A stretch of DNA of 64,000 nucleotides from IMGVR_UViG_3300046808_001241:62001-126000, one strand, 5' to 3'; numbered from the stretch's first letter, positions 5,051-61,169 are shown. Notes: generated from the letters alone by a model not told the origin. Translations and numbers: made by a program.

Positions 5051-5386
5051 ATGTCAGCTCCAAAAAAGACAAAAACAACAAAAGCTTCACTTTCTGGAGC
5101 AAATGAGAATATTCCAAAAGCAGAAAAGGCAAACATCGAAAGTCTATTTTCTAAAGCGTTAACGAGACACAAAAACGAAATTTTAGCAGATCAAAAAGAT
5201 AAATACAAAGAACTCAGTCATTTAGCACTTATTGTAGAAGAGTATTTGTCTTGCTTTGCTTTGATTGGTTACTCTTTACAAGACGAAGAGGTGGTAATTT
5301 TTAATACTCCTACGTCCAAAGATGAAGCAGCTTTAGTTGACTTGTTAAGATCTACTTTTATTGATATAGCAAACAATCGTCCCTAA
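5051..5386 (+). CDS. hypothetical protein
   Basis: ATG at 5051 (MSAPKK), directly upstream of the terminase. Confidence 0.55.
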   Translation: MSAPKKTKTTKASLSGANENIPKAEKANIESLFSKALTRHKNEILADQKDKYKELSHLALIVEEYLSCFALIGYSLQDEEVVIFNTPTSKDEAALVDLLRSTFIDIANNRP

Positions 5387-5389
5387 ATA
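5384..5389 (+). promoter_or_regulatory. T4-type late promoter core TAAATA (representative copy)
   Basis: TAAATA-N5-ATG also at 10155, 31787, 33657, 49058, 50075, 51127, 52644, 60697 (+) and 17277, 28375, 31785, 56012 (-). Confidence 0.7.
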
Positions 5390-5394
5390 TCTTC

Positions 5395-7392
5395 ATGTCA
5401 GAAGAAAATTTAGAGCGGCCTCAAAAGAGAGGCAAGGGCCGTCCTCCCGGAGCAAAAAACAAACCCAAAAGAGGTCGTCCAAAAGGTTCTAAGACCAAAG
5501 CAACCCCTCCTCCCGCTCTTCCTAAAATTGAATTTGTAAAAAAAAGTAAACCTTCACGCTCTGAGGAGGAAGTTTTAAACTCACTTTTAAGCGAGGACAA
5601 CCTTTTAGATGCTGGGTACAATACCCATACAGACAAGATTATCAATCAAGAGCCTGTAGATGTTTCTTTTTATTATAGAGGATCAAAGCATGTACCAGTA
5701 GCAGGAGCTCAGTATGAGTTTACTGTTGACATGATTGAAGAGCTGCGTAGATGTAAAAACGATATTGTGTATTTTGCAGAAAACTTTTTTTATATCGTGA
5801 GTATAGATGAAGGCAAACAAAGAATACATTTGTATGAAGCTCAAAAGCAAATGCTTCTTAACATGGTTAACAATAGGTTTTCCGTAAATTTAGCTTCAAG
5901 ACAGAGCGGAAAATCTACATTGCTTACTATATTTGTTCTGTGGATGGCTTGTTTTAATGATGATCACAGAGCAGCAATTGTAGCTAATAAAGAATCGACA
6001 GCAATTAATATTTTCAAACGCGTAAGAATGGCGTACGAACAACTTCCTAATTACATCAAACCCGGCGTTAAAGATTATGGTAAGACCGGAATGACGTTAG
6101 GAAATGATTCAAGTATATTAGTATCTACTACTACAGCCACATCAATTAGAGGTGATAGTTTAAGCACGCTTGCAATTGACGAAGTGGCATTCATAGAATC
6201 TCACTTACTTGAAGAGTTTTGGTCATCCGTTATTCCTGCAGTATCTTCTGGAAAAAAATCCAAAGTATTATTAGTCAGCACACCGAATGGTGTTGGAAAC
6301 AAATTTTATGAAATATTTTCAGGAGCAGAAAGTGGTTCGTTACCTAGTTGGAAACCCTCTCGTATTGATTGGTGGGATAGGCCCGGAAGAGACGAGCAAT
6401 GGAAGCAAGATCAAATCCAACTACTGGGCTCTGAAGAAAAATTTTTACAAGAATTCGGCAATACTTTTTTAGACGATGCTGCTGGAGCAGTTGGAGCTCT
6501 TGTAATCGAACGTCTTAAAAACGAAAAGAAAGATCCAATTTGGACATCAGAAGATGGGGAATATACTGTTTTTGAATATCCAGAACAAAGAAATTTATAT
6601 GTAGTTGGAGTAGATGTCGGAGAAGGTATTGGCAGAGCAGCTTCTGTTGCTCAAATATTAGATGTTACGGATTTACAAAATATTAAACAAGTTGGTATAT
6701 ATGCTTCAAATAAAATTGAGCCATATCACTTTGCAAACAAGCTTTCGACTATCGGTCAATCATGGGGACTTCCTCCAATGTTGATTGAGAGAAATAATTG
6801 CGGAGCTCAAGTAATTGACGCTTTACATCATAAACACAATTACGAAAAAATTGTTTGTTACTCAAAAATCTCTGAACAAGACAAGTACAATAGAACTAGA
6901 AACATGGGAGTACTGTCACACACCAACATTAAATTTGATGGTATTCAAAACATGAGGTATTGGATCAATCATTTACAAACCGTTCATATAAACGACCCTC
7001 ATACAATTTCAGAGTTTGAGACATTTGTAAGATTTCCAAATGGAGTCTTTAGAAAGAGAAATGATAATTTCTTTGACGATCGTGTAATGGCTTTGGTGTG
7101 GGCTTTGTTTATTTTGGAATCGGATATATGTCAGCAATATTTTGAAATTGTTGATTATGATATGCAACACAAACCCCAAAAAATTAAGGATAATGGTTAT
7201 TGGGAGAAAATTGAGCAATTTTATGAATTAAAAGAACTTTCAAAACAATCTACGATTATTCCTAAAATCTTTCGCCCTGAAAACGAACTTGCATTTAAAT
7301 CATTAAATGTTACTCAAAAAGATACAGAGTTTGTAGATAAATATGATGAAGACTTAGAAGGCTTATTAGCTCAAGGCTACGAATTTTTATAA
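5395..7392 (+). CDS. gp17: terminase large subunit (T4 gp17-like) with a basic AT-hook-like N-terminal extension
   Basis: Walker A SRQSGKS, Walker B LAIDE, STPNG, RNaseH-like VGVDVGEG and DDRVMAL. Confidence 0.95.
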   Translation: MSEENLERPQKRGKGRPPGAKNKPKRGRPKGSKTKATPPPALPKIEFVKKSKPSRSEEEVLNSLLSEDNLLDAGYNTHTDKIINQEPVDVSFYYRGSKHVPVAGAQYEFTVDMIEELRRCKNDIVYFAENFFYIVSIDEGKQRIHLYEAQKQMLLNMVNNRFSVNLASRQSGKSTLLTIFVLWMACFNDDHRAAIVANKESTAINIFKRVRMAYEQLPNYIKPGVKDYGKTGMTLGNDSSILVSTTTATSIRGDSLSTLAIDEVAFIESHLLEEFWSSVIPAVSSGKKSKVLLVSTPNGVGNKFYEIFSGAESGSLPSWKPSRIDWWDRPGRDEQWKQDQIQLLGSEEKFLQEFGNTFLDDAAGAVGALVIERLKNEKKDPIWTSEDGEYTVFEYPEQRNLYVVGVDVGEGIGRAASVAQILDVTDLQNIKQVGIYASNKIEPYHFANKLSTIGQSWGLPPMLIERNNCGAQVIDALHHKHNYEKIVCYSKISEQDKYNRTRNMGVLSHTNIKFDGIQNMRYWINHLQTVHINDPHTISEFETFVRFPNGVFRKRNDNFFDDRVMALVWALFILESDICQQYFEIVDYDMQHKPQKIKDNGYWEKIEQFYELKELSKQSTIIPKIFRPENELAFKSLNVTQKDTEFVDKYDEDLEGLLAQGYEFL

Positions 7393-7393
7393 T

Positions 7394-8002
7394 ATGTCAG
7401 ATCAAATTTGCACTAATCCAACTATACAATCGTCTTTGAATCGAGCTTCAAAAGACAAATTTGTTATGGTTCTTAATTTGCCTTATATACTCAGAAAACG
7501 CTCAACGGAAGACATTAACTTGGATATTGATCCGTTGCAACTAAACGTATTTGGTACAATAGTGCCACAAATAAGCATTCCGAGCGTGGAATTGAGATAT
7601 GCAGGACAATCGATTAATGTTTCTTCGCACAATCGTCCTAACTATCCACCATTAACAGTAAACTTCGTTGTCGATAACGACTATAAAAATTATTACGTTT
7701 TATGGAAATGGTTGGAAGTTCTCAATACTCCTCAAGAAAGTCTATATGGAGGCACTCCTCTAGAGCAAATGACCTCTCAAGAATATTTAAACTCAGGAGC
7801 AGAAAATGAGTATCAAACAACTGTTTCTATTTTAGGTTTAAATGAATACAACGACAAAGCAATAGAGTTTGTGTACAAACATTGCTTCATAACAAGCCTA
7901 GGCTCAATAAACTACTCATACAAAGACAGTGAATTTATTGAAATAGCTGCCGAATTCCAATTTAATCAATTGGATATCATTAAACCTAGCCCTAAAAAAT
8001 AA
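7394..8002 (+). CDS. tail tube terminator/completion protein (gp3-like, tube fold)
   Basis: P.I.IPSVE..Y, Y.PLTVNF.VD..Y.NY..LW.W, F.Y..CF.TSL pattern; precedes sheath. Confidence 0.6.
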   Translation: MSDQICTNPTIQSSLNRASKDKFVMVLNLPYILRKRSTEDINLDIDPLQLNVFGTIVPQISIPSVELRYAGQSINVSSHNRPNYPPLTVNFVVDNDYKNYYVLWKWLEVLNTPQESLYGGTPLEQMTSQEYLNSGAENEYQTTVSILGLNEYNDKAIEFVYKHCFITSLGSINYSYKDSEFIEIAAEFQFNQLDIIKPSPKK

Positions 8003-8027
8003 TCCAAAAAACATTAAATAAATATAT

Positions 8028-10148
8028 ATGGCAAGAACTATTACATCACCCGGCGTACAGATTACCGAAAAGGATCTTTCTTTAAGAATTGAAACTCCTG
8101 CTGGAACAAACGTTATTGTTCCTGGGTTTGCTACTCAAGGTCCAATTTCTGAACCACTTTTCATTACAACAGCAAGCGAGCTTGAAGCAATTTACGGCAT
8201 TCCCACGACACCTGCAGAGCGTTACTTTTATTATTCTTGCAAAGAAGTTTTAAATTCACCTGCAGTACTTACAACGTTGCGTTTGCCATATGGTGCTGAT
8301 ACAGGTTCTGCTTATTCCAAATCTTATAGCGCTCTATTTTACCCAATGCTTTCTTCGAGCGCTAATCCTTCAGTTTCAGCTGAATGGGAAATCGGAGCTC
8401 CGACTCATGTTTCGTTAACTCCTTCGCAATATACAAAAATCGTAGAAGGAAACTTTATTTGGACTGGAACAGAAGATGCTTTAGTCAGCAATTTAAGTGC
8501 AGACGCAGAAGTTTCAGCAGGTTTTATTATTTTAAACGACCTTCAAACGACAGTTAATGAAGTTGCAGAAGGATATTACATAGGGTTTGCTGATAACAAA
8601 TCGGTGTCTACGTCATCGCCAAATTTTGAATCAATCTTAGCAGTAACCACTCTTTCGGGAGATAATAACTATTTAAATGTAGCTACATCCCGTTTCGATT
8701 TCGCTTTATCGGCAACGGTTGATGACTCAAACAGAGGACTTCTTTCAATTTCAGAAACCCTCGAAAAGGTTGGATTTATTGGATTTGAAACAACCGAATA
8801 TCAAGACCATCTTTCTTTAGGCGTCTTCCGCGTTCGTAGATCCACTGCCGATTCTTCCCTTCTTTCACTTGCTACTACAGAAAAATATCTCGGCTCATTT
8901 GATTCAAACAGAAAGCAAGTCAGTCCAACAGGAGGAATTTTAGCCTCTTCGTTTATTGAAGATAAAATCAACAGCGCTTCTCCAACAATTAAAATTGTAA
9001 TAAACCCAACTATTTCAAAAAACTTTGATTGGACAACTAACTCAACCCTTCCTACTTCACGTGTAACCGTTGCAGACGATGCAAAAGGACTTTTCCCGGT
9101 TGGCGTATACGTTCCAGATAGCAGAATGGTTGAAGCAACAAAGATCATCGGCAACGTTCCAGGAAAACTTAACAAATCCTTAAGAACGCTTGAAACATTA
9201 GAAGATTCGGTAGTTGACGTCTTAGTAGATGGCGGATTATCGACAATTTACTCAGTAACTGAGTACGCTACATCTTTGTCATTTAATGATGAAACTTTCG
9301 TAGATTCTCCAAGTTCTGTACAACTCAATTGGCAAGCAGTTGCCAACGAACTTGTGAATTTTTCGCAAAATACACGCAAAGATTGTATGACTATCGTGGA
9401 TCCCGCAAGATCGATCTTTATTTCAGGCAGAGATTCAAAGGTAATTGATGGTGAAGACAAAACATTTACACTAGACATTTACAATCATTTAAGATCTTCC
9501 GTTGGAACATTTGAATCCAACTACGCAGCTACATATGGTAACTGGGTAAAAGTTCCAGACCTCTTTACTGGACGTAATATGTGGATGCCATTTTCTGGTT
9601 ACGCAGCAGCAATTTATGCAAGAAGCGATGCAGCAGCAAATACATGGGCTGCTCCAGCTGGTTTGACAAGAGGAGTGTTCAATGTACTTGATATTGCGTT
9701 CAACCCAAATCAAAAACAACGCGATCGCTTATATGAAATTTCAGTCAACCCTGTAGTTTTCTTTACAAACGAAGGCTTTTCTGTAATGGGTCAAAAGACC
9801 CTTCAAACTCGCCCAACTGCATTCGATAGAATTAACGTACGCAGATTGTTTCTAACTTTGGAAAGAGCCGTGCAAAGAACGTTAAAGTACTTTGTATTCG
9901 AACCCAATACAGATTTTACTCGTAACAGACTCAAGAACACAATTACTCCAATTTTCGAGTACGCTAAAAACACTGAAGGTCTTTATGATTATTTGATTGT
10001 TTGTGATGAAAGAAACAACACTCCAGATACAATTGATAACAACGAATTAATTGTCGATATTTACTTGAAGCCTGTAAGAACAGCAGAATTCTTGCTGGTA
10101 AACTTTATTGCAACTCGCACAGGACAAAACTTCCAAGAACTAATTTAA
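8028..10148 (+). CDS. gp18: tail sheath protein
   Basis: SPGVQITEKDLS start, W.APAGLTRG, VNPV..F..EG..V.GQKTL, RINVRRLF. Confidence 0.95.
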   Translation: MARTITSPGVQITEKDLSLRIETPAGTNVIVPGFATQGPISEPLFITTASELEAIYGIPTTPAERYFYYSCKEVLNSPAVLTTLRLPYGADTGSAYSKSYSALFYPMLSSSANPSVSAEWEIGAPTHVSLTPSQYTKIVEGNFIWTGTEDALVSNLSADAEVSAGFIILNDLQTTVNEVAEGYYIGFADNKSVSTSSPNFESILAVTTLSGDNNYLNVATSRFDFALSATVDDSNRGLLSISETLEKVGFIGFETTEYQDHLSLGVFRVRRSTADSSLLSLATTEKYLGSFDSNRKQVSPTGGILASSFIEDKINSASPTIKIVINPTISKNFDWTTNSTLPTSRVTVADDAKGLFPVGVYVPDSRMVEATKIIGNVPGKLNKSLRTLETLEDSVVDVLVDGGLSTIYSVTEYATSLSFNDETFVDSPSSVQLNWQAVANELVNFSQNTRKDCMTIVDPARSIFISGRDSKVIDGEDKTFTLDIYNHLRSSVGTFESNYAATYGNWVKVPDLFTGRNMWMPFSGYAAAIYARSDAAANTWAAPAGLTRGVFNVLDIAFNPNQKQRDRLYEISVNPVVFFTNEGFSVMGQKTLQTRPTAFDRINVRRLFLTLERAVQRTLKYFVFEPNTDFTRNRLKNTITPIFEYAKNTEGLYDYLIVCDERNNTPDTIDNNELIVDIYLKPVRTAEFLLVNFIATRTGQNFQELI

Positions 10149-10165
10149 TTTAACTAAATAATATT

Positions 10166-10765
10166 ATGGCAAACGCACAAACAATCCAAAAATTTTATAC
10201 AACAGCAGCTCAACGAGACTTTGCTAGACTTTTTCAATTTAGATTAATTTCTTTTGGAAATGTTGATTTTGGAACAGAGCAGCTCACATACGTTGAAACA
10301 GCCTCTCTTCCTGGAAGAACCATTAACAATGTTCAAGTACCATATATGGGACTTCAATTCAATGTTCCTGGAACGGTTTCGTATCCTGGTTCAACGGGCT
10401 ATGCCGTAGCCTTCCGTTGTGATCAAAATTACGATCTTAGAGCAGCACTGGAAGCAGCAACATTCAACACATTCGATGAAGCTAATTCTACTGGTCAGTA
10501 TTCCCTTCCTGGCATTAATAACACTCTAACGATGGAGTTGTTGGATAAGCAAATGAAGCCAGTAAGATATTATACTCTATATGGTGTATATGTTCAAGGC
10601 CTTGCCGATACAGCATATGACATTAAAGATACAGGAACGGTGTCAACGATTAATGCTACACTTGCTTATCAATTTTGGAGGTCAGGAAAAGTTGGTTCAC
10701 CAGTCACTCCTAATTTTGGTTATAAATATGCACCAGAATCTTGGGCTGGTCCTTCAAGACGATAA
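10166..10765 (+). CDS. gp19: tail tube protein
   Basis: Follows sheath; ASLPG, V.VPYMG..F.VPG, Y.L.GVY, TLAYQFW. Confidence 0.85.
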   Translation: MANAQTIQKFYTTAAQRDFARLFQFRLISFGNVDFGTEQLTYVETASLPGRTINNVQVPYMGLQFNVPGTVSYPGSTGYAVAFRCDQNYDLRAALEAATFNTFDEANSTGQYSLPGINNTLTMELLDKQMKPVRYYTLYGVYVQGLADTAYDIKDTGTVSTINATLAYQFWRSGKVGSPVTPNFGYKYAPESWAGPSRR

Positions 10766-13575: not shown

Positions 13576-13963
13576 GTCTTTAATTGACTGGGACGACACT
13601 ATACGTTGTAGACATTTTTCGTTTATTTTGTATAAAAAACGCATCGTCGCCACAGGAGTTAACACTCAAAAAACTCATCCATTAAATTTAAAAAATAGAA
13701 AAGTCTCAGTTAGAACCGGAGAAGATTTTTCGGAGCAGAAGCATATTTGTAGCGAATTTAGTGCAATAGTTAAACTTAAGAGATTGACGAATATAAACAC
13801 AAAGAAGTGCACATTGATTAATATGCGATATGATAGAAACAAAAGACTTGCACTAGCAAAACCTTGTATGTCGTGCATTAGCTTGTTGAAATATCATGAG
13901 TTTAAAAATATTCTTTACACAAATAACCAAGGCGTTTACGAAGAGTTTGTAATTGATAAATAG
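13523..13963 (+). CDS. second zinc-dependent cytidine/dCMP deaminase-like protein
   Basis: H.S.I....IVATG.N..KTHP, CSE in place of HAE, AKPC.SC. Confidence 0.75.
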   Translation: MELSVNKSIFKRLEEIAESLIDWDDTIRCRHFSFILYKKRIVATGVNTQKTHPLNLKNRKVSVRTGEDFSEQKHICSEFSAIVKLKRLTNINTKKCTLINMRYDRNKRLALAKPCMSCISLLKYHEFKNILYTNNQGVYEEFVIDK

Positions 13964-14219
13964 AAGGATGGAAACTATTATCGAACAAATCGCTGGAAAA
14001 CTCGAACTTATCCAATTCAATACAATTGACAAAGAAGCTGAGCTTAAAGCATTGAACTTAGCAAATGAGGTTTTGTACCCTCTTAAAGAGTCCCAAGAAA
14101 TACAAGACTATACATTTTCTGCAAGCATTGTTGGAGATATATTGAATATTTCAATCTTTATTACAGAAAGCGGTTGTGCAGAGTCGGTTCAGTGGGATTT
14201 AACTATTACTAAAAAGTAA
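13953..14219 (+). CDS. hypothetical protein
   Basis: 88-aa operonic ORF. Confidence 0.5.
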   Translation: MINRRMETIIEQIAGKLELIQFNTIDKEAELKALNLANEVLYPLKESQEIQDYTFSASIVGDILNISIFITESGCAESVQWDLTITKK

Positions 14220-14259
14220 TTACTTGATCTGTCCTTTAGTTGAAAGGACTATATCATTA

Positions 14260-14946
14260 ATGAAAACTTTCGAACAAAAAGGTCTGTGTTTTATTGGCGA
14301 TATACATGGAGATTATTTTTTAATAGAGGACTTCTGCAAGCACAATAAAGATTACATTGTATGCCAGGTTGGAGACTTTGGTCTGGGGTTTGGCTATGCT
14401 AATTCAGAATTAGCTCGCTTAAATGCAATCAACAGCGTTTGTAAGGCAAACAACAATATCCTTTGCGTTATTAGAGGAAACCACGACAGCCCCAAACGCT
14501 TTGAGGAGTTCAGGAATAAACTTTCAAACGTGTATCTTCCGGAAGATTATGAGGTTTGTGAATGGCATGGCAAAAAAATTCAATTTATTGGCGGAGCAAT
14601 TTCTATTGACAGAACAGCACGGGTTGATGGTAGTTCCTATTGGAGAGACGAAGGAGTGGTGTTCGATCGAACAAAATGCCAAAAGGTAGACATCCTAGTA
14701 ACGCATACAGCTCCTTCGCATTGCTTTCCTCAACAATTTAACGAAATGGTGCATGGTTGGGCTAAAGAAGACGATTCTTTGTTAAATGATTTAACATCAG
14801 AGAGGGCTGTGATGGATGAAATTTTTAAATTGTGCAGACCCTCGTATCATGTATATGGACACTTCCACGCTTCGCATACAGAAGAGATAAATGGTTGTAA
14901 GCACAATCTTTTGGATATTGATGAAATCAAAGAATATAGAAACTGA
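14260..14946 (+). CDS. calcineurin-like metallophosphoesterase
   Basis: GDIHG, GDFG, GNHD, THTAP, GHFH motifs; ATG at 14260. Confidence 0.9.
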   Translation: MKTFEQKGLCFIGDIHGDYFLIEDFCKHNKDYIVCQVGDFGLGFGYANSELARLNAINSVCKANNNILCVIRGNHDSPKRFEEFRNKLSNVYLPEDYEVCEWHGKKIQFIGGAISIDRTARVDGSSYWRDEGVVFDRTKCQKVDILVTHTAPSHCFPQQFNEMVHGWAKEDDSLLNDLTSERAVMDEIFKLCRPSYHVYGHFHASHTEEINGCKHNLLDIDEIKEYRN

Positions 14947-16827: not shown

Positions 16828-17266
16828 CAATACCTGCCAAGTTATCCATAGCAATTGCTAGCTTTTGATGAGCCCAAGCTTCTAAGCGACTTCCGGAAGC
16901 ACAGTGAGAAGCAATTTTCATAATTGATTCCCTAATTGAATTTAAATTGTCAAGAGCCATTTCGTGAGCTTCTTCACAATCGCACTCCTCAGATCCACAA
17001 CCACAACCGTAATGCTCGTCTCCCATTTCTGCTGAAGTCATTGCAACAGGAATTCCGGTTGTATCTTTGTCTTCTGGCTCGACGTCTTCAACTTCAGAGT
17101 TGATCATATCCATGCTAACTCCAGGAGCAGGCTCGTCCATAGGCCCAGCACTTACAACCTCATTTGGTTCAGTTATGACTGTTTCTTTATCAGAAGGAAC
17201 AGAGGGAGTTTTTTTAGAGATAGAAAGATAAGCTTCCTCGAGAAGTTGTGAGTCTTTTTTAAGCAT
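16811..17266 (-). CDS. acidic hypothetical virion/head protein
   Basis: TAAATA-N5-ATG; CGCGSEECDC cluster; EMA..L...LEAW..QKL motif. Confidence 0.6.
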   Translation of the reverse strand: MLKKDSQLLEEAYLSISKKTPSVPSDKETVITEPNEVVSAGPMDEPAPGVSMDMINSEVEDVEPEDKDTTGIPVAMTSAEMGDEHYGCGCGSEECDCEEAHEMALDNLNSIRESIMKIASHCASGSRLEAWAHQKLAIAMDNLAGIARSLH

Positions 17267-17287
17267 ATATTTATTTATCAAATTCTG

Positions 17288-21274: not shown

Positions 21275-21282
21275 GGATAAAG

Positions 21283-25421: not shown

Positions 25422-25458
25422 TTTGATTAACTCTTGTTAAACTTTAAGTACAAATAAC

Positions 25459-28364: not shown

Positions 28365-28368
28365 ACTA

Positions 28369-35825: not shown

Positions 35826-35829
35826 TATT

Positions 35830-40668: not shown

Positions 40669-40718
40669 ATATCTTATTTATCAGTTGAACGGTTATTTTC
40701 TTGGCCTAAATACTGTAT

Positions 40719-46547: not shown

Positions 46548-46565
46548 GGTTGTAATTTTATTTAT

Positions 46566-46712: not shown

Positions 46713-46717
46713 AAAAA

Positions 46718-47395: not shown

Positions 47396-47444
47396 AGTAT
47401 TTCTGATTTTATTTATCTACATATAAATATTTTTCTTTGTTTGT

Positions 47445-48275: not shown

Positions 48276-48304
48276 AGAAGTTTAATAATTAAATATGTTT
48301 AATA

Positions 48305-49060
48305 ATGTCTTGCTTAATCAAAAACATTCCAAATAGTGCTAAAGTTCTTTATGGAACTGGTAACAAAGGTTTGTTCTTTCCTTTAGTTCCTATTTGCGAG
48401 ACTATTGATCAGCCGGAAGCTCCTCCTCCAGAAGAATGTTATCTTGCAGTAGAGTTGGGAAATCTGACATCAAATGCTTCTGATCCTTGTTATGGAACAC
48501 ACGAGAGAGTTTGGAACTGGGAATCAAATGTATGTGGCCATTCTTCAGACGTAGTTACTTGGGAGAATACTAATAACAATCAGTCTTTAGCAAAACAATG
48601 GATTGACTGCTTTGGAGATTATAACTTAGATTGGTCATGGAAGGAAAGAAAGTGTGCTTCCCTTGTACAAACAAAATGGAAAGATACAAAATGTTCTGCT
48701 TCTTATGCTAAAACATGGAAAGAAAGACCATTAATTTGTTTTGAAAAACATAATCTAGAGTGGCAATGGAAAGCAAGAGAGTGTACAGACAATTCAACAA
48801 CAATGGTTAAATGGAAGGATGCAGAGTGCTCTGGAACATATAACAAAAAATGGAAGTATGAAGCTCCAGACCCTGTAGAAGAATTGACAGACGACGAAAT
48901 TCTTTTAGAATTATTAAATCCAGTTACTGATAATGATTACAGAATTCAAGCTCCTTGCGTTGAAATTGATTTCTGTTATATTGCTTTAGAAGAAGATGGA
49001 GTAACATCAATTGATCAACAAGAAACAAATGATGTTTTCTTAACCGACTGCCTTGCATAA
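48305..49060 (+). CDS. Trp/Cys-repeat hypothetical virion protein
   Basis: Three W.W....C......W....C.....K.W units. Confidence 0.55.
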   Translation: MSCLIKNIPNSAKVLYGTGNKGLFFPLVPICETIDQPEAPPPEECYLAVELGNLTSNASDPCYGTHERVWNWESNVCGHSSDVVTWENTNNNQSLAKQWIDCFGDYNLDWSWKERKCASLVQTKWKDTKCSASYAKTWKERPLICFEKHNLEWQWKARECTDNSTTMVKWKDAECSGTYNKKWKYEAPDPVEELTDDEILLELLNPVTDNDYRIQAPCVEIDFCYIALEEDGVTSIDQQETNDVFLTDCLA

Positions 49061-49068
49061 ATAAAACT

Positions 49069-49722
49069 ATGTCCTGTGTTGATCTAGCATATATTTCAAA
49101 TGAAGAGTGTATAGGTAATTCTTTATCTTCGATTAATGGAAACTTTGCAGCTCTTTCTGCAGCTGTTTGTGACCTTAGTGGAGGACCATCATCTTCTGAT
49201 TTGCTTACTCTTATCAACACACTAAGTACAAATATGCAAAACATTGGAAATTATCCTTATTTGGAGTATGCTTGGGTGACTGCTCCTAATGCTGCTGGTC
49301 AAACTATTACAGCAAACACCAGTGCTGTATTAACACTAAATACAGAAGTAGCTGACTCTGGAAACTTTGGATCTTTAGCTTCTAGTCAAATTACTCTTTC
49401 TGCAGGAACATATCAGTACGACATCGACACGAACATAGTAGCAGTATTAAATTCAATTAATCCAGGAGTAATAATCGGTATTTGGAACAACAATTCATCT
49501 AATTGGATAACACGTAGAGGCAGGTCAATTTATTCAGGTTTGGATGGTCCGATTTTCGGATTAAAAGGGCAATTTACTATTGCAGCTGAATCGATCATAG
49601 ACCTTAGATTAATTCCCACAACAAGCATCATAATTCATTCTTGTGGATACCAGGCCAGTTTTACAAACTCGACAGCAAATGCTGACCAACGAACAACAAT
49701 CAAACTCTGGAAAGTAGGTTAA
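49069..49722 (+). CDS. short fibre/adhesin-like protein
   Basis: ECIGNSL..INGNF..L N-terminus; C1q/jelly-roll-like LSAGTY C-terminus; followed by a chaperone gene. Confidence 0.6.
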   Translation: MSCVDLAYISNEECIGNSLSSINGNFAALSAAVCDLSGGPSSSDLLTLINTLSTNMQNIGNYPYLEYAWVTAPNAAGQTITANTSAVLTLNTEVADSGNFGSLASSQITLSAGTYQYDIDTNIVAVLNSINPGVIIGIWNNNSSNWITRRGRSIYSGLDGPIFGLKGQFTIAAESIIDLRLIPTTSIIIHSCGYQASFTNSTANADQRTTIKLWKVG

Positions 49723-49723: not shown

Positions 49724-50077
49724 ATGATCACACAAGCTCATATCGAAACAATTTTAGGAGCAGCCTTATCAAATCTCGGTCATCCAATCGGAAACGCTGC
49801 TTTCTGGCAAGAACATATCAAAGGAACAAATGTTACTGAAAAGCAAATATTTGAGGAATGTGAAAGACTCTTAAAAGAACAACAAGGAATTTCTACTACG
49901 ATGGATTCTGTTAGACAAAAAAGAGATGCTCTTCTTAAAGAATCTGATTGGGTTGGCCTTACCGATGCTGTTGTTAAGACCAAAGAAGCTTGGTTAAGTT
50001 ATCGTCAAGCTCTTAGAGATCTTCCAAGTACTTTTAAAACTCCTGAAGAAGTAGTTTGGCCAAATAAACCTCAGTAA
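49724..50077 (+). CDS. tail fibre assembly chaperone
   Basis: R.KRD.LL..SDW...W..YRQALRDLP..WP motif. Confidence 0.85.
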   Translation: MITQAHIETILGAALSNLGHPIGNAAFWQEHIKGTNVTEKQIFEECERLLKEQQGISTTMDSVRQKRDALLKESDWVGLTDAVVKTKEAWLSYRQALRDLPSTFKTPEEVVWPNKPQ

Positions 50078-50085
50078 ATAACTTT

Positions 50086-50295
50086 ATGTCTTGTGTTGAT
50101 TTAAAATTCATTTCCAGCAAAGAGTGCATGGGAAATTCTTTGTCCTCTATCAATGGAAACTTTGCAGCTCTTTCAAGTGCTGTTTGTAACTTTAATGTAA
50201 TTGATAGCTCTTCAGTAGATCTTACCTTTGATTCTATGACAAGAACACTAAGTGCAGATGTTGACACTATTACAGATGCAATAATTTTTGGATAA
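50086..50295 (+). CDS. short paralogue of the 49069 fibre N-terminus
   Basis: MSCVDL.FIS..EC.GNSLSSINGNFAALS.AVC fused to one DLTFD..TRTLSADV unit. Confidence 0.6.
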   Translation: MSCVDLKFISSKECMGNSLSSINGNFAALSSAVCNFNVIDSSSVDLTFDSMTRTLSADVDTITDAIIFG

Positions 50296-50940: not shown

Positions 50941-51129
50941 ATGAAACTTATTATCAAAAAAACAAACGATGAGCGTTGGGATTTTGTAGCCGATGCTCTT
51001 AAAGGCGAAACTGGTGTTATCACAGCAACTGAGATTAGAAACGGCATTGTCCACTACAACGCAAACTTTCCAGTATATGGTGGATTGTTTGTAGGAATTC
51101 CTGCTTCTGTTGTAGAAGTGGTTGAATAA
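50941..51129 (+). CDS. small hypothetical protein
   Basis: 62-aa operonic ORF. Confidence 0.5.
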   Translation: MKLIIKKTNDERWDFVADALKGETGVITATEIRNGIVHYNANFPVYGGLFVGIPASVVEVVE

Positions 51130-51137
51130 ATAACATC

Positions 51138-52313
51138 ATGGCTGGACCTACAAGAATTTCAGAACTAAGTGACGGATCACCCGTTCAACCAACAGATCAA
51201 GTTCCTGTTGCAAGAGGATCTGGTGCAACTGGCTATACATATAAAGTAAATGCTGGAAGAATTGTTTCGGATCTTTTTAATGTAGGAAACAGTTCAACGG
51301 TTGATTTGACTTTTGATACTTCTACAAGGACTTTGTGCGCTGCTGCTAATATTCCTGAAGCTTCTGTGAATGTAGTTGATAGTCCTACTATTGATTTAGA
51401 TTGGAATGCTTCTACTAGGACTCTTTCTGCAGATGTTTCTACAGCTGTTAGAAATGCTTCTGCTTTTAATGTAGTAGGTAGTCCAACTATTGATTTAGAT
51501 TGGAATGCTTCTACAAGGACTCTGAGTGCAGAAGTAATTGGTTCTTTTTGTTTTAGAAACAAACTTATCAACGCTCAAGGTCTTATTAATCAAAGAGGCT
51601 ACATCTCTGGAACAGCCACTACTCAAGCAAATCAATATACAGTAGATCGTTGGAGAGTAGTTACCTCTGGCCAGAATTTAGTATTTTCTACATCCCAGAA
51701 CATAGTTACTTTTACAGCTCCTGCAGGAGGAGTAGAGCAGGTAGTAGAAGGATTGAATGTAGAAAGTGGAACTTATGTTTTAAACTGGACTGGAACAGCT
51801 ACTGCTGCAGTAAATGGAACAGCAAGAACAAAAGGAGCAACGTTTTCTTTAACAGGAGGATCAAACGTTACTGTAAGATTTTCTAGCGGAACTTTTTCAT
51901 TGCCTCAGCTTGAAAAAGGAAACGTTTCTACTGCTTTTGAATACAGACCAATTGGAACAGAGTTGGCTTTGTGTCAGAGGTATTATTCTAAAAGTTATCC
52001 TTTAGAAGTGCCCGTTGGGGCTATTAGTAGCGATGGTATTGTAAATTGGAGGTCCACATACAATGCAGCAAACGGGGATTTTAATTCTGTCGAATTCAAA
52101 GTTACCATGAGGGCTAAGCCTCAAGTTTCTTTGTATTCCCCTCACGCACTTAACGTCATAAACAGATGGTACGATTACACGTTAGGCGATGGCTCGACAA
52201 CACGAGACGTGCTAGCCCAACATATTGGCTCTAATGGCTTTATGGCAAGAATGAATAATGTTCCTGTTAACCATTCTGTAGGCGGGAACTGGACAGCAGA
52301 TGCAGAACTCTAA
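51138..52313 (+). CDS. tail fibre protein
   Basis: ISEL.DG..PVARG start, 33-aa repeats, RN.LIN....INQRG..YT.DRW, QLE.G..T.FEYRP...EL.LCQRYY. Confidence 0.85.
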   Translation: MAGPTRISELSDGSPVQPTDQVPVARGSGATGYTYKVNAGRIVSDLFNVGNSSTVDLTFDTSTRTLCAAANIPEASVNVVDSPTIDLDWNASTRTLSADVSTAVRNASAFNVVGSPTIDLDWNASTRTLSAEVIGSFCFRNKLINAQGLINQRGYISGTATTQANQYTVDRWRVVTSGQNLVFSTSQNIVTFTAPAGGVEQVVEGLNVESGTYVLNWTGTATAAVNGTARTKGATFSLTGGSNVTVRFSSGTFSLPQLEKGNVSTAFEYRPIGTELALCQRYYSKSYPLEVPVGAISSDGIVNWRSTYNAANGDFNSVEFKVTMRAKPQVSLYSPHALNVINRWYDYTLGDGSTTRDVLAQHIGSNGFMARMNNVPVNHSVGGNWTADAEL

Positions 52314-53046
52314 TCTTATGAAAACTTATATTGATCACGATTCTACAATTCATTTTGAAGGTCTTTGGATTCCAAAAGATCCCTCTAACAGACACTATGC
52401 TCAATTCCTGCAAGAAGTAACAGAAGGAAATGCTAAATTAATTCCTTATGTTCCTCCTGCTCCTACTTGGGAACAGATTAGAGCAAAAAGAGATGGTTTA
52501 TTAAAAGACTCTGATTGGGCTGTTGCAGGAGATGCTAATCCAAAGCCTTCCAAAGAAGCATGGCTAGCTTATCGTCAGACTCTAAGAGACATTCCTAGCA
52601 CTTTTAAAACTCCTGAAGAAGTAGTCTGGCCAAAGGTTCCTAATAAATAACATCATGGCTGGAGTAAAAATTTCCCAATTACAAGACGGAGGAGCTCTTC
52701 AACCAACAGATGCTTTTCCAGTAGCTCGTGGATCATTTACAAGAAAGATTGCTGGATCAGAGCTTTTAACTCCCACAAACTTTAATGTAGCAGATAGTCC
52801 AACAATAAATTTAAATTGGGATAGCACTACTAGGACTCTTTCTGCAGATGTTTCTACAGCTGTTAAAGAAGCTTCTGCTTTTAATGTAGTGGATAGCTCT
52901 ACTATTGACTTGAATTGGAATGCTTCTACAAGAACTCTTTCTGCTGATGTTTCTACAGCTGTTAAAGAAGCTTCTGCTTTTAATGTTGTAGATAGCTCTA
53001 CTATTGATTTAGACTGGAATGCTTCTACGAGGACTTTAAGTGCAGG
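51320..53046 (+). repeat. 99-nt (33-aa) repeats shared by two fibre genes (about 51320-51540 and 52780-53046)
   Basis: VVDS(S/P)TIDL(D/N)WNASTRTLSADVSTAV(K/R)(E/N)ASAFN; near-identical DNA. Confidence 0.85.
52318..52650 (+). CDS. tail fibre assembly chaperone
   Basis: IP.DP.N.HY, KRD.LL..SDW, AYRQ.LRDIP. Confidence 0.85.
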   Translation: MKTYIDHDSTIHFEGLWIPKDPSNRHYAQFLQEVTEGNAKLIPYVPPAPTWEQIRAKRDGLLKDSDWAVAGDANPKPSKEAWLAYRQTLRDIPSTFKTPEEVVWPKVPNK

Positions 53047-55453: not shown

Positions 55454-56001
55454 GATTCAATAATTTTTGCAAATAATGCTTCGAACTGAAAAGACTCTTC
55501 GTAAGGTTCTTTTAAAGAAGGTTTAGCAGACAAGTGTTGGTGAATTTGCTCATAAGCATCTTGACCAGCCATTTCAACGTCTTCGGAAGTCAAATCATGA
55601 ATAGCAAGCATTTTAGCAGTGTCTTCTGCAGAAGGATTTTCAAACTTCTTAGGACGGCCTCTAACATCATGTCTATCAACAATTGCCCCGTATTGATAAT
55701 CTGTATCTTCGGATGATTCCCCAAGAGAAAAAACAAGTACCAAATCAACTCCAGGATCGGATTTAACTTTATAAAATACAGAAGCTTCAGTCTTATCCAT
55801 TGTTGGAATAACTGATTTAAATTCGAGATTTGAACTAACTTCAGATTCATTCAAAGATTCATTAGCAGCTTCAGAAGCATAAAGAGCTTTTTGTTGAGCC
55901 TTTGCTTTAGCTTTTGTTAAGGGTTTTTTAGAAAAAGATTTAGAAGAACCTTTTTTGAAAACTTTATAACCAGATCCAGATTTGTGTACAACGTATGGCA
56001 T
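55450..56001 (-). CDS. hypothetical protein with a basic N-terminal motif
   Basis: MPYVVHK..YKV..T..KA..Q.KAL; TAAATA-N5-ATG at 56001. Confidence 0.6.
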   Translation of the reverse strand: MPYVVHKSGSGYKVFKKGSSKSFSKKPLTKAKAKAQQKALYASEAANESLNESEVSSNLEFKSVIPTMDKTEASVFYKVKSDPGVDLVLVFSLGESSEDTDYQYGAIVDRHDVRGRPKKFENPSAEDTAKMLAIHDLTSEDVEMAGQDAYEQIHQHLSAKPSLKEPYEESFQFEALFAKIIES

Positions 56002-56012
56002 AGTATTATTTA

Positions 56013-56299: not shown

Positions 56300-57328
56300 T
56301 TAACAAAAAACGTTTAATAAATTTTGAGCAAATAAGAATGCTGGAACAGCCAATGCAGTCAAAACTCCTATGAAGAACTGAGCTGGCAGGTTGTCCTGAT
56401 ACGAATTCATCAGCTCTTGTTCAAGAAGTTCTTTTTCTTTAAGACCTTGCTGATAGAAATCTGCATAGTTGATTGTGCCTCCACCAAACATGTTGGTACC
56501 AACAAATTTACCTCTAACCGACCCAATTGCAATCTTTGTCAAAGCTAAAGCATATTTCTGAACCCAACGTTCGCGGATTAAATCTTTAATTGGCCGTTCA
56601 ACATAGCACCCGACAACTCCAAGATATGTATGAGTGTCGCGAGGCTCAGGAATAATTCTAAGTAACTGAGTTCTTGGATCAAATCTAAACTGATCCTGCA
56701 TTGCAAGAACTTTATTTCTTGTGTCAATAAATCCTTTTAAAACTTCCCAAGTAATTAGATCAAAACCAAAGTTCCCGATCATATAGCTAGAATATATTTG
56801 ACTTGCCATTGCTTGCTCTAAAGTAAACAAAGTATTAATACCTGTATCTTCTCCTTTGGAAAATTCAAAACAATCCATGACCTTACGAAAAGAAGCCATG
56901 TCATAATCGTAATCTAGATCATCTTTTGCTGTACATTCAGCAGACAACGTAGGATTGGAAGCATCCCACTCAGCACTTAAAGCTGGAGTAGGGCATTCAC
57001 ATCCTGAAACAGTAGCTGTTGAGCTAGCTAGTGACTTTTGTTTTGAAATTAATTGATCCGATTTATTGAACAAATCATCTACTTTAATTCCAACTCCAGG
57101 GACATAGAGTCTAGAATCAAAAATGAGATATTCTTCGGTATAACCAGCCCATTTAGTAAAGTATTCTATAGCATCAGTTATGTTGTCGTAGATTTGCTCA
57201 TCAGAGATTTCCAGATTAACTAATGGGGCTCCAAGTTGTCGTTGAATACGAACAGAAAGATCCTCATATGAAGTAACTTGAGGATTTAATGTAGTTCCTC
57301 CTCTATAGCCTGGTGGTAATACTGACAT
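56300..57328 (-). CDS. gp13: neck protein
   Basis: RQLGAP.V.LEI...QI.D.I..A.EYF, W...YAL.L.K..G..RGKF....GG..IN, P..FFIG. Confidence 0.85.
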   Translation of the reverse strand: MSVLPPGYRGGTTLNPQVTSYEDLSVRIQRQLGAPLVNLEISDEQIYDNITDAIEYFTKWAGYTEEYLIFDSRLYVPGVGIKVDDLFNKSDQLISKQKSLASSTATVSGCECPTPALSAEWDASNPTLSAECTAKDDLDYDYDMASFRKVMDCFEFSKGEDTGINTLFTLEQAMASQIYSSYMIGNFGFDLITWEVLKGFIDTRNKVLAMQDQFRFDPRTQLLRIIPEPRDTHTYLGVVGCYVERPIKDLIRERWVQKYALALTKIAIGSVRGKFVGTNMFGGGTINYADFYQQGLKEKELLEQELMNSYQDNLPAQFFIGVLTALAVPAFLFAQNLLNVFC

Positions 57329-57342
57329 ATAGATTATTTAAT

Positions 57343-60285: not shown

Positions 60286-60286
60286 A

Positions 60287-60508
60287 ATGAAAAATCAAAA
60301 AATTACTGCAACATTAAGTCTGGTCAAAAAACAACAAGAACCGGTACTGTATTACGAAGATCTTCTTAAACAAAAAGAATTTAGCTTAGATGACTGGCGT
60401 AAAGCTAAGCGGAAACATCCTATCCGTACCTGGTTTCGTTCTCAGTATGTAACCATTTGCGATGCTTTAAGAGAAGCCAAATATGCTTTTACACGTTGGT
60501 GTTCGTGA
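60287..60508 (+). CDS. small hypothetical protein
   Basis: Operonic ORF. Confidence 0.45.
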   Translation: MKNQKITATLSLVKKQQEPVLYYEDLLKQKEFSLDDWRKAKRKHPIRTWFRSQYVTICDALREAKYAFTRWCS

Positions 60509-60703
60509 TTGATAATCTTCATAATGGAACCCAATTCAACAAAAACTCCACAGTACACAAACGAAGAACTCGAAATGTTCGTAAGCACAAAAAACTATAA
60601 AACAATGAAGTCTTCATTTTTGATACATTGGGCTAGCGCTAAATTACAAATTCGTTTGTGGAGAGCAGCCTTGATTGGTTTATTTGGCGCGAAAGATAAA
60701 TAA
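60509..60703 (+). CDS. small hypothetical protein
   Basis: Operonic ORF, start uncertain. Confidence 0.4.
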   Translation: MIIFIMEPNSTKTPQYTNEELEMFVSTKNYKTMKSSFLIHWASAKLQIRLWRAALIGLFGAKDK

Positions 60704-60707
60704 CTAC

Positions 60708-61169
60708 ATGTCGGACATTGACTTTATTTCATTATGTGAATCGGTTATAGAAGAAACGTTGCTCTTTGAAGCAAGAACAGAATATTATAAAGAGATTGCT
60801 GATGAGGCTAATCGAGCAAGAAAAATTAGGCAAACGACTAAAGATACACAAGAAAAAGAACAAGCTCAAACTGACCTTAAAGGACTACAAACTCGATTTT
60901 TAGGAGAACTAAATTATGGCACGAGACCAGAAAATGCGTTGAGAACAAATGATGAGCTTGAAGCAGTTATTCACGAAATTGCTCTTCAAGGGCCTGTAAA
61001 TCTTTCAGGACTTAACAATCTAAAGCCGTCTGTTCTTGGAGATGTCGATGCATTGGTACCTCGAACTGAAAACAATGCGTTATTTGCTATCTTTAGAACT
61101 TTGAAAGAAAAAGGCAAGAACATTTATCAAATTTTGGCAAACAAACAAAAAACCGGAAAATACGAATGA
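60708..61169 (+). CDS. hypothetical protein, possibly virion
   Basis: TAAATA-N5-ATG; DFISLCE..LLFE leader. Confidence 0.55.
   Translation: MSDIDFISLCESVIEETLLFEARTEYYKEIADEANRARKIRQTTKDTQEKEQAQTDLKGLQTRFLGELNYGTRPENALRTNDELEAVIHEIALQGPVNLSGLNNLKPSVLGDVDALVPRTENNALFAIFRTLKEKGKNIYQILANKQKTGKYE

What the first reader, a model, noticed from the sequence alone, without database searches (positions are those of the whole stretch)
5384..60710. Window-wide TAAATA-N5-ATG rule implies leaderless late mRNAs
Seen: 13 genes have TAAATA exactly 5 nt before ATG (starts 5395, 10166, 31798, 33668, 49069, 50086, 51138, 52655, 60708 on +; 17266, 28364, 31774, 56001 on -), several more at 6-7 nt, and no Shine-Dalgarno motif at these starts. 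Established (recalled): the T4 late element TATAAATA spans about -13 to -6, so a 5-nt spacer puts the A of ATG at +1. Inference: late genes are largely individually promoted and translated leaderless, unlike T4, and this may point to a host with weak SD use.
Basis: partly seen in the sequence, partly recalled or inferred. Interest (0 to 1): 0.6.

Follow-up and report, generated by a model that had tools for sequence, protein, structure and literature searches.

The report
Late promoters butted against start codons
In this uncultured freshwater T4-like phage a short late-promoter box (TAAATA) sits 5-14 bases before about a quarter of all start codons, most often exactly 5, and no ribosome-binding (Shine-Dalgarno) sites are used, so many of its messages probably begin at or just before the AUG; this is unlike T4, but no transcript starts were mapped.

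Summary
All 13 listed TAAATA-N5-ATG sites exist, plus a 14th at 13968. Shuffles of the window give 1.17 on average. The 217-kb phage genome has 32 such sites against 1 in a reversed-pattern control.

The spacer histogram is not flat. N0-4 is almost empty, N5 is the mode, there is a tail to about N14, and nothing lies beyond. The same bounds hold in 79 related IMG/VR loci. The box is conserved upstream of sheath and tube orthologues.

T4 and Syn9 have no such peak. The cultured Pelagibacter phage HTVC008M has a smaller one.

The genome encodes a gp55-like late sigma factor. The T4 register (TATAAATA at -13 to -6) puts +1 on the A of ATG for N5. Shine-Dalgarno motifs are absent genome-wide.

A second promoter class, sigma70-like and early, also abuts ATGs.

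The best reading is gp55-type late promoters giving leaderless or near-leaderless mRNAs, with downstream genes translated by coupling.

Two limits apply. No transcript 5' ends could be mapped, because only contigs were available. Only about a third of the window's genes carry the box, so "largely individually promoted" is overstated. The host is unknown.

The parts
5384..5397 (+). TAAATA-N5-ATG, large terminase start (5395)
   Evidence: The TAA of the box is the upstream gene's stop. Relatives have TAATTA or TGAGTA here, so this is the weakest of the listed sites.
10155..10168 (+). TAAATA-N5-ATG, tail tube start (10166)
   Evidence: The box is conserved upstream of tube orthologues in 65 of 75 relatives, with N5 in 22.
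13957..13970 (+).
17264..17277 (-). TAAATA-N5-ATG, 151-aa ORF start (17266)
28362..28375 (-). TAAATA-N5-ATG, 163-aa ORF start (28364)
31772..31785 (-). TAAATA-N5-ATG, 44-aa ORF (31774); one arm of a palindromic divergent pair
   Evidence: Only 23 nt separate it from the divergent ATG at 31798.
31787..31800 (+). TAAATA-N5-ATG, DUF6267 protein start (31798)
33657..33670 (+). TAAATA-N5-ATG, 284-aa ORF start (33668)
49058..49071 (+). TAAATA-N5-ATG, 217-aa ORF start (49069)
50075..50088 (+). TAAATA-N5-ATG, 69-aa ORF start (50086)
51127..51140 (+). TAAATA-N5-ATG, tail-fibre-like protein start (51138)
   Evidence: The same 30-nt junction is repeated at G000 180489(-).
52644..52657 (+). TAAATA-N5-ATG, 281-aa ORF start (52655)
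55999..56012 (-). TAAATA-N5-ATG, 183-aa ORF start (56001; second ATG of the frame)
60697..60710 (+). TAAATA-N5-ATG, 153-aa ORF start (60708)
40666..40680 (-). TAAATA-N6-ATG, 185-aa ORF (40668); divergent pair with 40719
   Evidence: The 50-nt intergenic region holds both boxes.
40707..40721 (+). TAAATA-N6-ATG, GroES-like protein (40719)
46710..46724 (-). TAAATA-N6-ATG, 48-aa ORF (46712)
57326..57340 (-). TAAATA-N6-ATG, head-tail adaptor-like protein (57328)
8015..8030 (+). TAAATA-N7-ATG, tail sheath (8028)
   Evidence: Orthologues keep ATAA[A/G]TA here with spacers of 6-14 nt.
29230..29245 (+). TAAATA-N7-ATG, 86-aa ORF (29243)
885..900 (+). TAAGTA-N7-ATG (variant box), 137-aa ORF (898)
62055..62070 (+). 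TAAGTA-N7-ATG (variant box), 276-aa ORF (62068)
25445..25461 (+). TAAGTA-N8-ATG (variant box), 488-aa ORF (25459)
47452..47468 (+). TAAATA-N8-ATG, endonuclease VII-like protein (47466)
21272..21289 (-). TAAATA-N9-ATG, 1328-aa protein (21274)
48290..48307 (+). TAAATA-N9-ATG, 251-aa ORF (48305)
46545..46564 (-). TAAATA-N11-ATG, scaffold-like protein (46547)
35812..35832 (+). TAAGTA-N12-ATG (variant box), 297-aa ORF (35830)
47393..47415 (-). GATAAATA-N14-ATG, prohead protease (47395)
   Evidence: A metatranscriptome contig runs into Illumina adapter at 47393/47394, which suggests an RNA 5' end within a few nt of this ATG.
14224..14262 (+). The one early-type promoter in the window: TTGATCTGTCC, 17-nt spacer, GACTAT, N7, ATG (14260)
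   Evidence: It belongs to an array of about 28 such promoters at G000 185-27000.

Best explanation
The element [A/G]-A-TAA[A/G]TA is the late promoter of this T4-superfamily phage, read by host RNA polymerase carrying the phage's gp55-like sigma factor.

In this lineage the box lies 5-14 nt upstream of start codons. With the T4 register (box at -13 to -6) transcription then begins at the A of the AUG for N5. It probably does so for N6 as well, where the base before ATG is usually a pyrimidine. For longer spacers it begins no more than about 9 nt upstream.

First cistrons of late units would therefore be translated as leaderless or near-leaderless mRNAs without Shine-Dalgarno pairing. The roughly two thirds of genes that lack a box follow the preceding gene with overlap or a gap of at most 3 nt, and are probably translated by termination-reinitiation coupling.

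Early genes use a sigma70-like promoter (TTGACCTGTCC, 17-nt spacer, [G/T]AnnAT) that is likewise fused to the ATG.

Shown: the motif, its spacing statistics, its conservation, the gp55 homologue and the absence of SD.
Inferred: that the box is a promoter, where +1 lies, and the mode of translation.
For: 1. Position-specific enrichment.
- Window: 14 N5 sites against 1.17 in shuffles.
- Genome: 32 against 1 in the reversed control.

2. Spacers at first-ATG gene starts.
- This genome: N0-4=3, N5=30, N6=9, N7=6, N8=7, N9=10, N10-16=9, almost none beyond.
- 79 related loci (605 kb): N0-4=7, N5=74, N6=52, N7=37, tail to N14=14, then almost none.
- A mode that sits on a hard lower bound is what a transcript that must contain the whole AUG predicts. 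It is not what a ribosome-binding spacer optimum predicts.

3. T4 register -13..-6 (PMC2988020).

4. gp55 homologue.
- phrog_234, E=1.8e-19 and 1.1e-17.
- The only PDB hit is T4 gp55, 7D7C_F, E=0.002.
- The equivalents of pocket residues Y97 and T99, which hold A-12 and A-8, are kept (with PMC7892883).

5. Conservation.
- The box persists upstream of sheath and tube orthologues at 46-88% protein identity while the flanks diverge.
- The coupled gene at 7394 lacks it in 40 of 52 relatives.

6. Only 75 of 293 genes carry it. Their median gap to the upstream gene is 17 nt. For the other 201 genes the median gap is 1 nt.

7. Divergent pairs 23-54 nt apart carry one box per side: 31774/31798, 40668/40719 and G000 37952/38007.

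8. Genes with a box and a known function are late: terminase, sheath, tube, tail fibre, adaptor, protease, scaffold.

9. No SD anywhere. Sigma70-like promoters are depleted in the late region, 39 against 56.5 expected.

10. An independent early promoter class has -35, a 17-nt spacer and -10, followed by N6/N7 (15 sites) or N10 (12 sites) before ATG.

11. A -10-type box about 10 nt before the start codon is the accepted signature of leaderless genes (PMC3160421; PMC12340547).

12. An RNA contig ends in sequencing adapter at 47393/4, beside the ATG of the protease gene.
Against: - No 5'-end mapping. Logan contigs cannot show starts.
- One 100%-identical RNA-library contig begins at 50299, 5 nt upstream of the ATG at 50304 (TAAATT-N5). 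That needs read-through, DNA carry-over or an earlier start.
- gp33 and a gp45-type clamp were not found. The gp55-like protein lacks an obvious C-terminal clamp-binding motif. The T4 spacing rule is therefore carried over to a diverged system.
- The most strongly transcribed late gene (major capsid) has no nearby box. RNA contigs run at least 103 nt upstream of its ATG.
- In 19 of 75 cases the box contains the upstream stop codon.
- The TerL site is not conserved as TAAATA.
- How leaders of 4-9 nt without SD would be translated is unexplained.
Confidence: 0.6

Rival explanations
1. The box is a translation-initiation element: a non-SD, A/U-rich ribosome or S1 binding site at a preferred distance from AUG in an SD-independent host. 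Transcripts would start further upstream from unrecognised promoters.
For: The host evidently does not use SD. Upstream regions of all genes are A/T-rich and G-poor. The box lies where an RBS would lie. One RNA-library contig extends 5 nt upstream of an N5-type ATG.
Against: - Only about a quarter of genes have the box. Operon-internal genes lack it, and so does the conserved coupled gene at 7394 in 40 of 52 relatives.
- It matches the T4-family late consensus, and a gp55 homologue is present.
- The spacing has a hard lower bound at N5 with the mode on that bound.
- Divergent pairs only 23-54 nt apart leave no other room for promoters.
- HTVC008M uses SD at 55% of its genes, yet has TAAATA-N5 at 9 annotated, mostly late CDS starts.
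- This reading is not exclusive of the promoter reading.
Confidence: 0.12
2. The box is a late promoter, but the start site differs from the T4 rule. The N5/N6 messages would then have either a few extra 5' nucleotides or a start inside the annotated ATG, with true start codons lying downstream.
For: The gp55-like protein is only about 30% identical to T4 gp55, and the clamp and gp33 were not found. The contig start at 50299 lies immediately after a TAAATT box.
Against: The empty N0-4 classes and the sharp N5 mode in two independent data sets fit +1 at the 6th or 7th nt after the box. N-termini of tube and sheath orthologues align from residue 1 at these ATGs.
Confidence: 0.2
3. The pattern is a by-product of AT-rich gene junctions: a TAA stop codon plus an AT-rich spacer before the next ATG.
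For: In 11 of 75 cases the TAA of the box is the upstream stop, and in 8 more the stop is the TAA of TAAATAA. Examples are 5395, 49069, 50086 and 51138.
Against: - 56 of 75 sites do not involve the stop codon, and 25 have no same-strand upstream gene end within 60 nt.
- Dinucleotide-preserving shuffles give 1.17 against 14 observed.
- T4, at 35% GC, shows no N5 peak.
- The box is conserved across orthologues whose stop positions differ.
Confidence: 0.03

Closest known systems
T4 late promoters (TATAAATA, gp55/gp33/gp45-dependent)
   Same: The core is the same: A-TAAATA with A at -12 and A at -9/-8. There is no -35 conservation. The density is similar (75 boxes in 217 kb, against about 50 in 169 kb for T4). 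A gp55 homologue with conserved base-pocket residues is present, and the box sits in front of structural genes.
   Different: In T4 the box lies 12-29 nt from the ATG and an SD lies between them. Here it lies 5-14 nt away with no SD. Position -13 is A/G rather than T, and TAAGTA is tolerated. gp33 and gp45 were not detectable.
Leaderless transcriptomes of Thermus phages phiYS40 and Lalka27a
   Same: Most middle and late (phiYS40) or most (Lalka27a) transcripts start with the A or G of the start codon, driven by a -10-type element just upstream (PMC3594737; bioRxiv 10.64898/2026.04.20.719267).
   Different: Those phages are unrelated to this one. Their hosts (Deinococcus-Thermus) are known to use leaderless mRNAs, and their 5' ends were mapped experimentally. 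Here the promoter type is gp55-like, the host is unknown, and nothing is mapped.
Leaderless gene signature in bacteria (TANNNT about 10 nt before the start codon; Actinobacteria, Deinococcus-Thermus)
   Same: A promoter -10 box at a fixed short distance from the start codon, with a minimum workable distance (PMC3160421; PMC12340547). The early promoters here fit it directly, with the -10 hexamer 6-7 nt before ATG.
   Different: That signature describes host genomes and sigma70-family housekeeping promoters, not a phage-encoded late sigma.
Pelagibacter phage HTVC008M (cultured, Kyanoviridae)
   Same: It has 12 gene starts with TAAATA-N5-ATG. Nine coincide with annotated CDS starts, mostly late functions, including a divergent pair 26 nt apart. 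Of the three reference genomes compared, it is marginally the nearest to this phage.
   Different: Its other genes do use SD (55%) and it has no N6-N14 tail. Protein identity to this phage is only about 30%.
Poxvirus late promoters (TAAATG initiator overlapping the start codon); from my own knowledge, not tested here
   Same: A late-promoter core is fused to the ATG, so that late messages have almost no templated leader.
   Different: A eukaryotic virus with its own RNA polymerase and poly(A) heads. This is an analogy only.

Membership tests
T4-type (gp55-dependent) late transcription system | 8-bp TATAAATA-like box as the only conserved promoter element, with no -35 | tested here: met
   Aligned boxes give A/G (42/28%) at -13, A (61%) at -12, then TAA[A 76%/G 24%]TA, then A (64%). 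Nothing is conserved further upstream. The box is conserved in orthologous positions in relatives.
T4-type (gp55-dependent) late transcription system | gp55 late sigma factor | tested here: met
   G000 44849-45382 matches phrog_234 at E=1.8e-19 and 1.1e-17. The only PDB hit is gp55, 7D7C_F, E=0.002. The NPxxYxT motif with the Y97 and T99 equivalents is kept.
T4-type (gp55-dependent) late transcription system | gp33 co-activator | tested here: inconclusive
   The Syn9 gp33-like protein found nothing in the genome. gp33 is small and fast-evolving, so a blank says little.
T4-type (gp55-dependent) late transcription system | gp45 sliding clamp as activator, and a clamp-binding C-terminus on gp55 | tested here: inconclusive
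   phrog_223, PF02916 and PF09116 gave no match above threshold. The gp44 clamp loader is present. The gp55-like C-terminus shows no SLDFL-type motif.
T4-type (gp55-dependent) late transcription system | Transcription start 6 nt after the box (box at -13..-6) | not testable with these tools
   The register comes from PMC2988020. Only contigs were available. The hard N5 lower bound is indirect support.
T4-type (gp55-dependent) late transcription system | Late mRNAs with an SD-containing leader (as in T4) | tested here: not met
   T4 spacers are 12-29 nt and 64% of its genes have SD. Here spacers are 5-14 nt and SD is at 13%, no higher than the 17% in-gene control.
Leaderless mRNA genes | Promoter -10-type box at a fixed short distance upstream of the start codon | tested here: met
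   Late box at N5/N6 in 39 gene starts. Early -10 hexamer at N6/N7 in 15 sites.
Leaderless mRNA genes | mRNA 5' end at the first base of the start codon | tested here: inconclusive
   RNA-library contigs give an adapter junction at 47393/4, next to ATG 47395 (an N14 gene), and a contig start at 50299, 5 nt before ATG 50304. Contigs cannot map starts.
Leaderless mRNA genes | No SD; AUG start codon | tested here: met
   A 5-6 nt spacer leaves no room for SD, and SD is absent genome-wide. ATG is part of the search pattern. One possible TAAATA-N6-GTG start was seen at G000 182095.
Sigma70-type early promoters | -35 TTGACA-like, 17 +/- 1 nt spacer, -10 TAnnnT-like | tested here: met
   About 28 copies of TTGACCTGTCC, with 12 further bases completing a 17-nt spacer, then [G/T]AnnAT, on the + strand of G000 185-27000, plus window 14224. 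Activity was not tested.

The most novel reading that the evidence does not exclude
A whole, widespread lineage of uncultured aquatic T4-superfamily phages expresses its genes without Shine-Dalgarno sites. At least 591 related sheath loci are in IMG/VR, and the cultured Pelagibacter phage HTVC008M shows a partial version.

Both the host-sigma early promoters and the gp55-type late promoters are fused in register to the AUG, so that the promoter also defines the translation start. Downstream cistrons rely on coupling.

This would imply that an abundant but unidentified freshwater host translates 5'-terminal AUGs efficiently.
Probability: 0.45. Interest if true: 0.7.

Novelty: new variant of a known kind. 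Interest (0 to 1): 0.58.

Why it matters
If late (and early) messages of this phage group really start at the AUG, T4-type late transcription has been re-wired into a leaderless expression system. To my knowledge that has been mapped so far only in Thermus phages.

It would have several consequences:
- The box would give an exact rule for calling start codons and transcription units in hundreds of uncultured phage contigs.
- It would flag the unknown host as SD-independent and competent for leaderless translation.
- It would offer a cultured test system in HTVC008M and Pelagibacter.
- It would show that promoter-to-ATG spacing histograms can reveal translation mode from sequence alone.

Tried and rejected
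- RNA evidence. Four metatranscriptome runs hold parts of the region, but only as contigs, so no starts can be read. The depths (capsid about 1000x, neighbours 4-20x) show transcription but not 5' ends. The low-depth contigs may even be DNA carry-over.
- Host identification.
  - The 32-nt 3' end of the phage tmRNA matched 11 genomes from six phyla, and only in the tRNA-like ends.
  - The tmRNA against the phage database gave only short terminal matches.
  - There is no psbA.
  - The nearest cultured phages share only 30-38% protein identity.
  - Canonical -35/-10 early promoters argue against Bacteroidota, and SD use in HTVC008M argues against a SAR11-like host. Neither is proof.
- An IMG/VR scan for the early promoter word gave 118 single chance matches and no relatives. 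Two longer related contigs hold only a few early-type promoters.
- gp45 and gp33 searches were blank.
- The two genes upstream of gp44, checked as clamp candidates, have no Pfam or PHROG match. In the protein atlas they gave only weak ADP-ribosyltransferase-like leads, below 0.9.
- A generic TANNNT peak upstream of the 201 genes without a box is absent.
- Melnitz (OM43 phage), P-SSM2, Syn9 and T4 show no N5 enrichment.
- PHROG annotation of 20 box-bearing genes left most of them as unknown function.
- The large protein searches and structure prediction were not used.

Full report
**What the window is.** The window is bases 62001-126000 of a 217,182-bp IMG/VR virus record. The record has 127-bp exact terminal repeats, is estimated complete, and has 36.5% G+C. 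Near-identical DNA is found in freshwater and lake metagenomes.

It is a myovirus of the T4 superfamily. The window encodes large terminase (5395-7392), tail sheath (8028-10148), tail tube (10166), major capsid protein (44092-45537, minus strand), prohead protease (46718-47395, minus) and portal (57343-59241, minus). The nearest cultured phages are cyanophages, Pelagibacter phage HTVC008M and Agrobacterium phage OLIVR5, which share only 30-38% protein identity.

**The observation.** Every one of the 13 listed sites is present as described. A 14th N5 site lies at 13957-13970. The window has 14 matches to TAAATA-N5-ATG, against 1.17 +/- 1.14 in dinucleotide-preserving shuffles. The genome has 32, against 1 for the reversed control pattern.

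The hexamer itself is not over-represented: 220 observed against about 250-284 expected. The signal lies in where the hexamer sits. The spacer histogram to any ATG reads N5=32, N6=14, and 0-9 elsewhere.

I then restricted the count to first ATGs of ORFs of at least 60 aa and allowed the variant TAAGTA. The spacers are N0-4=3, N5=30, N6=9, N7=6, N8=7, N9=10, N10-16=9, and practically nothing beyond. The refutation condition 'flat distribution' is therefore not met.

**It is not a stop-codon artefact.** In 19 of 75 box-bearing starts the upstream stop codon lies inside the box. In the other 56 it does not, and 25 have no same-strand upstream gene end within 60 nt. T4, with similar G+C, shows no N5 peak.

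**It is a conserved cis-element.** The sheath protein finds at least 591 related stretches in IMG/VR. In the 79 non-identical loci among the 80 kept (605 kb, sheath identity 46-88%) the spacer distribution has the same shape: N0-4=7, N5=74, N6=52, N7=37, a tail to N14=14, then almost nothing.

The box ATAA[A/G]TA is retained upstream of the sheath and tube orthologues while the flanking sequence changes. The spacer differs by clade, from 5-7 nt in the closest relatives to 10-14 nt in distant ones. The gene between terminase and sheath (7394) overlaps the terminase stop, and it lacks the box in 40 of 52 relatives. The box therefore marks particular genes. It is not a general translation signal.

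**Why it is most likely the late promoter.**
- Its core equals the T4-family late consensus.
- The review of T4 late transcription places TATAAATA at -13 to -6 and notes no -35 conservation (PMC2988020). Here too, nothing upstream of the box is conserved.
- The genome encodes a gp55 homologue at G000 44849-45382 (phrog_234, E=1.8e-19 and 1.1e-17). Its only PDB match is T4 gp55.
- In the alignment it keeps the equivalents of Y97 and T99. In the cryo-EM structure these residues hold the flipped A-12 and A-8 (PMC7892883).
- Box-bearing genes of known function are late genes: terminase, sheath, tube, tail fibre, adaptor, protease and scaffold.
- Sigma70-like promoters are depleted in the late region, 39 against 56.5 expected.
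- Divergent gene pairs only 23-54 nt apart carry one box on each side.

**Why leaderless is the best reading.**
- With the T4 register, N5 puts +1 on the A of ATG.
- At N6 the base before ATG is mostly T or C. A purine start on the A, 7 nt after the box, is therefore plausible.
- The mode of the spacer distribution sits exactly on a hard lower bound. This is what is expected if the transcript must include the whole AUG. The Deinococcus work likewise reports that moving the -10 box too close to the start codon gives aberrant expression (PMC12340547).
- A -10-type box about 10 nt upstream of start codons is the accepted computational hallmark of leaderless genes (PMC3160421).
- The phage uses no SD. 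SD-like 4-mers occur upstream of 13% of genes, below the in-gene control of 17%. The same measure gives 64% in T4, 55% in HTVC008M and 37% in Syn9.

**Independent support from the early region.** About 28 copies of a sigma70-like promoter lie on the + strand of G000 185-27000, and one lies in the window at 14224. Each is TTGACCTGTCC, an exact 17-nt spacer, and a [G/T]AnnAT hexamer. Each is followed by ATG after 6-7 nt (15 sites) or 9-10 nt (12 sites, with a conserved ACTGTT). By the usual rule that +1 is the 7th nt after the hexamer, these messages would start at the ATG or 1-4 nt before it.

The genome thus shows three gene classes:
- 75 genes with late boxes, median gap to the upstream gene 17 nt.
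- At least 17 genes with early promoters.
- 201 genes with neither. Their median gap to the upstream gene is 1 nt, and 103 of 179 overlap it or lie within 3 nt, which fits translational coupling.

**What is not shown.** No 5' ends were mapped. Four metatranscriptomes hold parts of 45301-51300, but only as assembled contigs.
- They show strong transcription of the capsid gene, about 1000x against 4-20x for its neighbours.
- One 100%-identical contig runs into Illumina adapter at 47393/4, next to the ATG (47395) of the protease gene. That gene's box is N14, which predicts +1 at about 47404. The contig fits an RNA end close to the ATG, but it does not resolve a 0-nt from a 9-nt leader.
- Another contig starts at 50299, 5 nt before ATG 50304 (TAAATT-N5). 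That is compatible only with read-through, DNA carry-over or an earlier start.
- The capsid gene has no box near its ATG. It sits behind a 44-nt A-rich intergenic region, with a TAAGTA 45 nt upstream. RNA contigs extend at least 103 nt upstream of its ATG, so not all late genes are leaderless.
- gp33 and a gp45-type clamp were not detected. The T4 start-site rule is therefore applied to a diverged system.

'Largely individually promoted' is too strong: 27 of 85 genes in the window carry a box within 5-14 nt, 20 of them within 5-7 nt. The TerL site is probably the least reliable, since relatives have TAATTA or TGAGTA there. The 'unlike T4' statement is verified. The 'weak-SD host' idea is supported by the phage's own SD-free genome.

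The host was not identified. The canonical -35/-10 early promoters argue against Bacteroidota.

**Comparison with what is known.** Leaderless late transcripts are documented for Thermus phage phiYS40 and for Lalka27a. No held paper combines TATAAATA with 'leaderless'.

Among reference T4-like genomes, T4, Syn9, P-SSM2 and Melnitz show no N5 enrichment. The cultured Pelagibacter phage HTVC008M does: it has 12 gene starts at N5. Nine of them coincide with annotated CDS starts, mostly late functions. These include a divergent pair 26 nt apart that mirrors 31774/31798 here.

I therefore rate this as a new variant of a known kind: a gp55-type late promoter fused to the start codon, within an SD-free genome plan.

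**Verdict.**
- Confidence that the box is the late promoter is about 0.85.
- Confidence that the N5/N6 class yields leaderless mRNAs is about 0.6.

Noticed in passing
G000:C1:185-27000 (+), outside the window; one copy in the window at 14224-14262: An array of about 28 early-type promoters. Each is TTGACCTGTCC, a 17-nt spacer and [G/T]AnnAT, placed directly in front of a small ORF with ATG 35/36 or 39 nt from the TTGAC. The 11-nt -35 word is far more conserved than a normal -35 and may also be a regulator site.
   Followed up: partly
G000:C1:24603-25036 (+) and 25054-27047: A full-length phage-encoded tmRNA (Rfam RF00023, 125.7 bits, E=1.7e-48) with an unusually long predicted 33-aa tag ending in YELAA. 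It is followed by a cluster of about 11 tRNA genes. tmRNAs are rare in phages but are reported for Melnitz and Mosig (PMC9004378).
   Followed up: partly
NC_020484 (HTVC008M) 6269, 7551, 11961, 16005(-), 18914(-), 18932, 19445, 75548, 75819: In the cultured Pelagibacter phage, TAAATA-N5-ATG coincides with nine annotated CDS starts. They include the tape measure, DNA end protector, head closure, tube cap and tail completion genes. The spacer is usually GTAnT.
   Followed up: partly
window 49069-53829 (+) and G000:C1:174335-181616 (-): Paralogous tail-fibre-like cassettes. The 30-nt junction GTAGAAGTGGTTGAATAAATAACATCATG is identical at window 51138 and G000 180489. RNA contigs break at this repeat.
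   Followed up: no
window 44035-44060 (-) and 45538-45605: A strong hairpin terminator (11-bp stem, 7 GC pairs, T-run) lies right after the capsid gene. In a related phage seen in run X20, 66 nt of the capsid-upstream intergenic region are missing (joint 45538 to 45605).
   Followed up: no
G000:C1:184240-185756 (+): Two adjacent genes of similar size (245 and 260 aa) and similar start context lie just upstream of the gp44 clamp loader. They have no Pfam or PHROG match. Their nearest named atlas clusters are ADP-ribosyltransferases (scores 0.88-0.89), which is a lead only. This is reminiscent of T4 ModA/ModB.
   Followed up: partly
window 40719-41090 (+); G000:C1:170446-170940 (+): A GroES-like co-chaperonin (phrog_3188) and an Hsp20-like protein (phrog_432). 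The Hsp20-like gene is one of the few genes with an AGGAG-like upstream word.
   Followed up: no
G000:C1:19632-19706: ARAGORN calls a tRNA with a four-base anticodon (gacg). Rfam does not confirm it, so it is probably a false call.
   Followed up: partly
window 47466-48275 (+): An endonuclease VII / HNH / Lar-like composite protein sits between the head genes and carries its own late box (N8).
   Followed up: no
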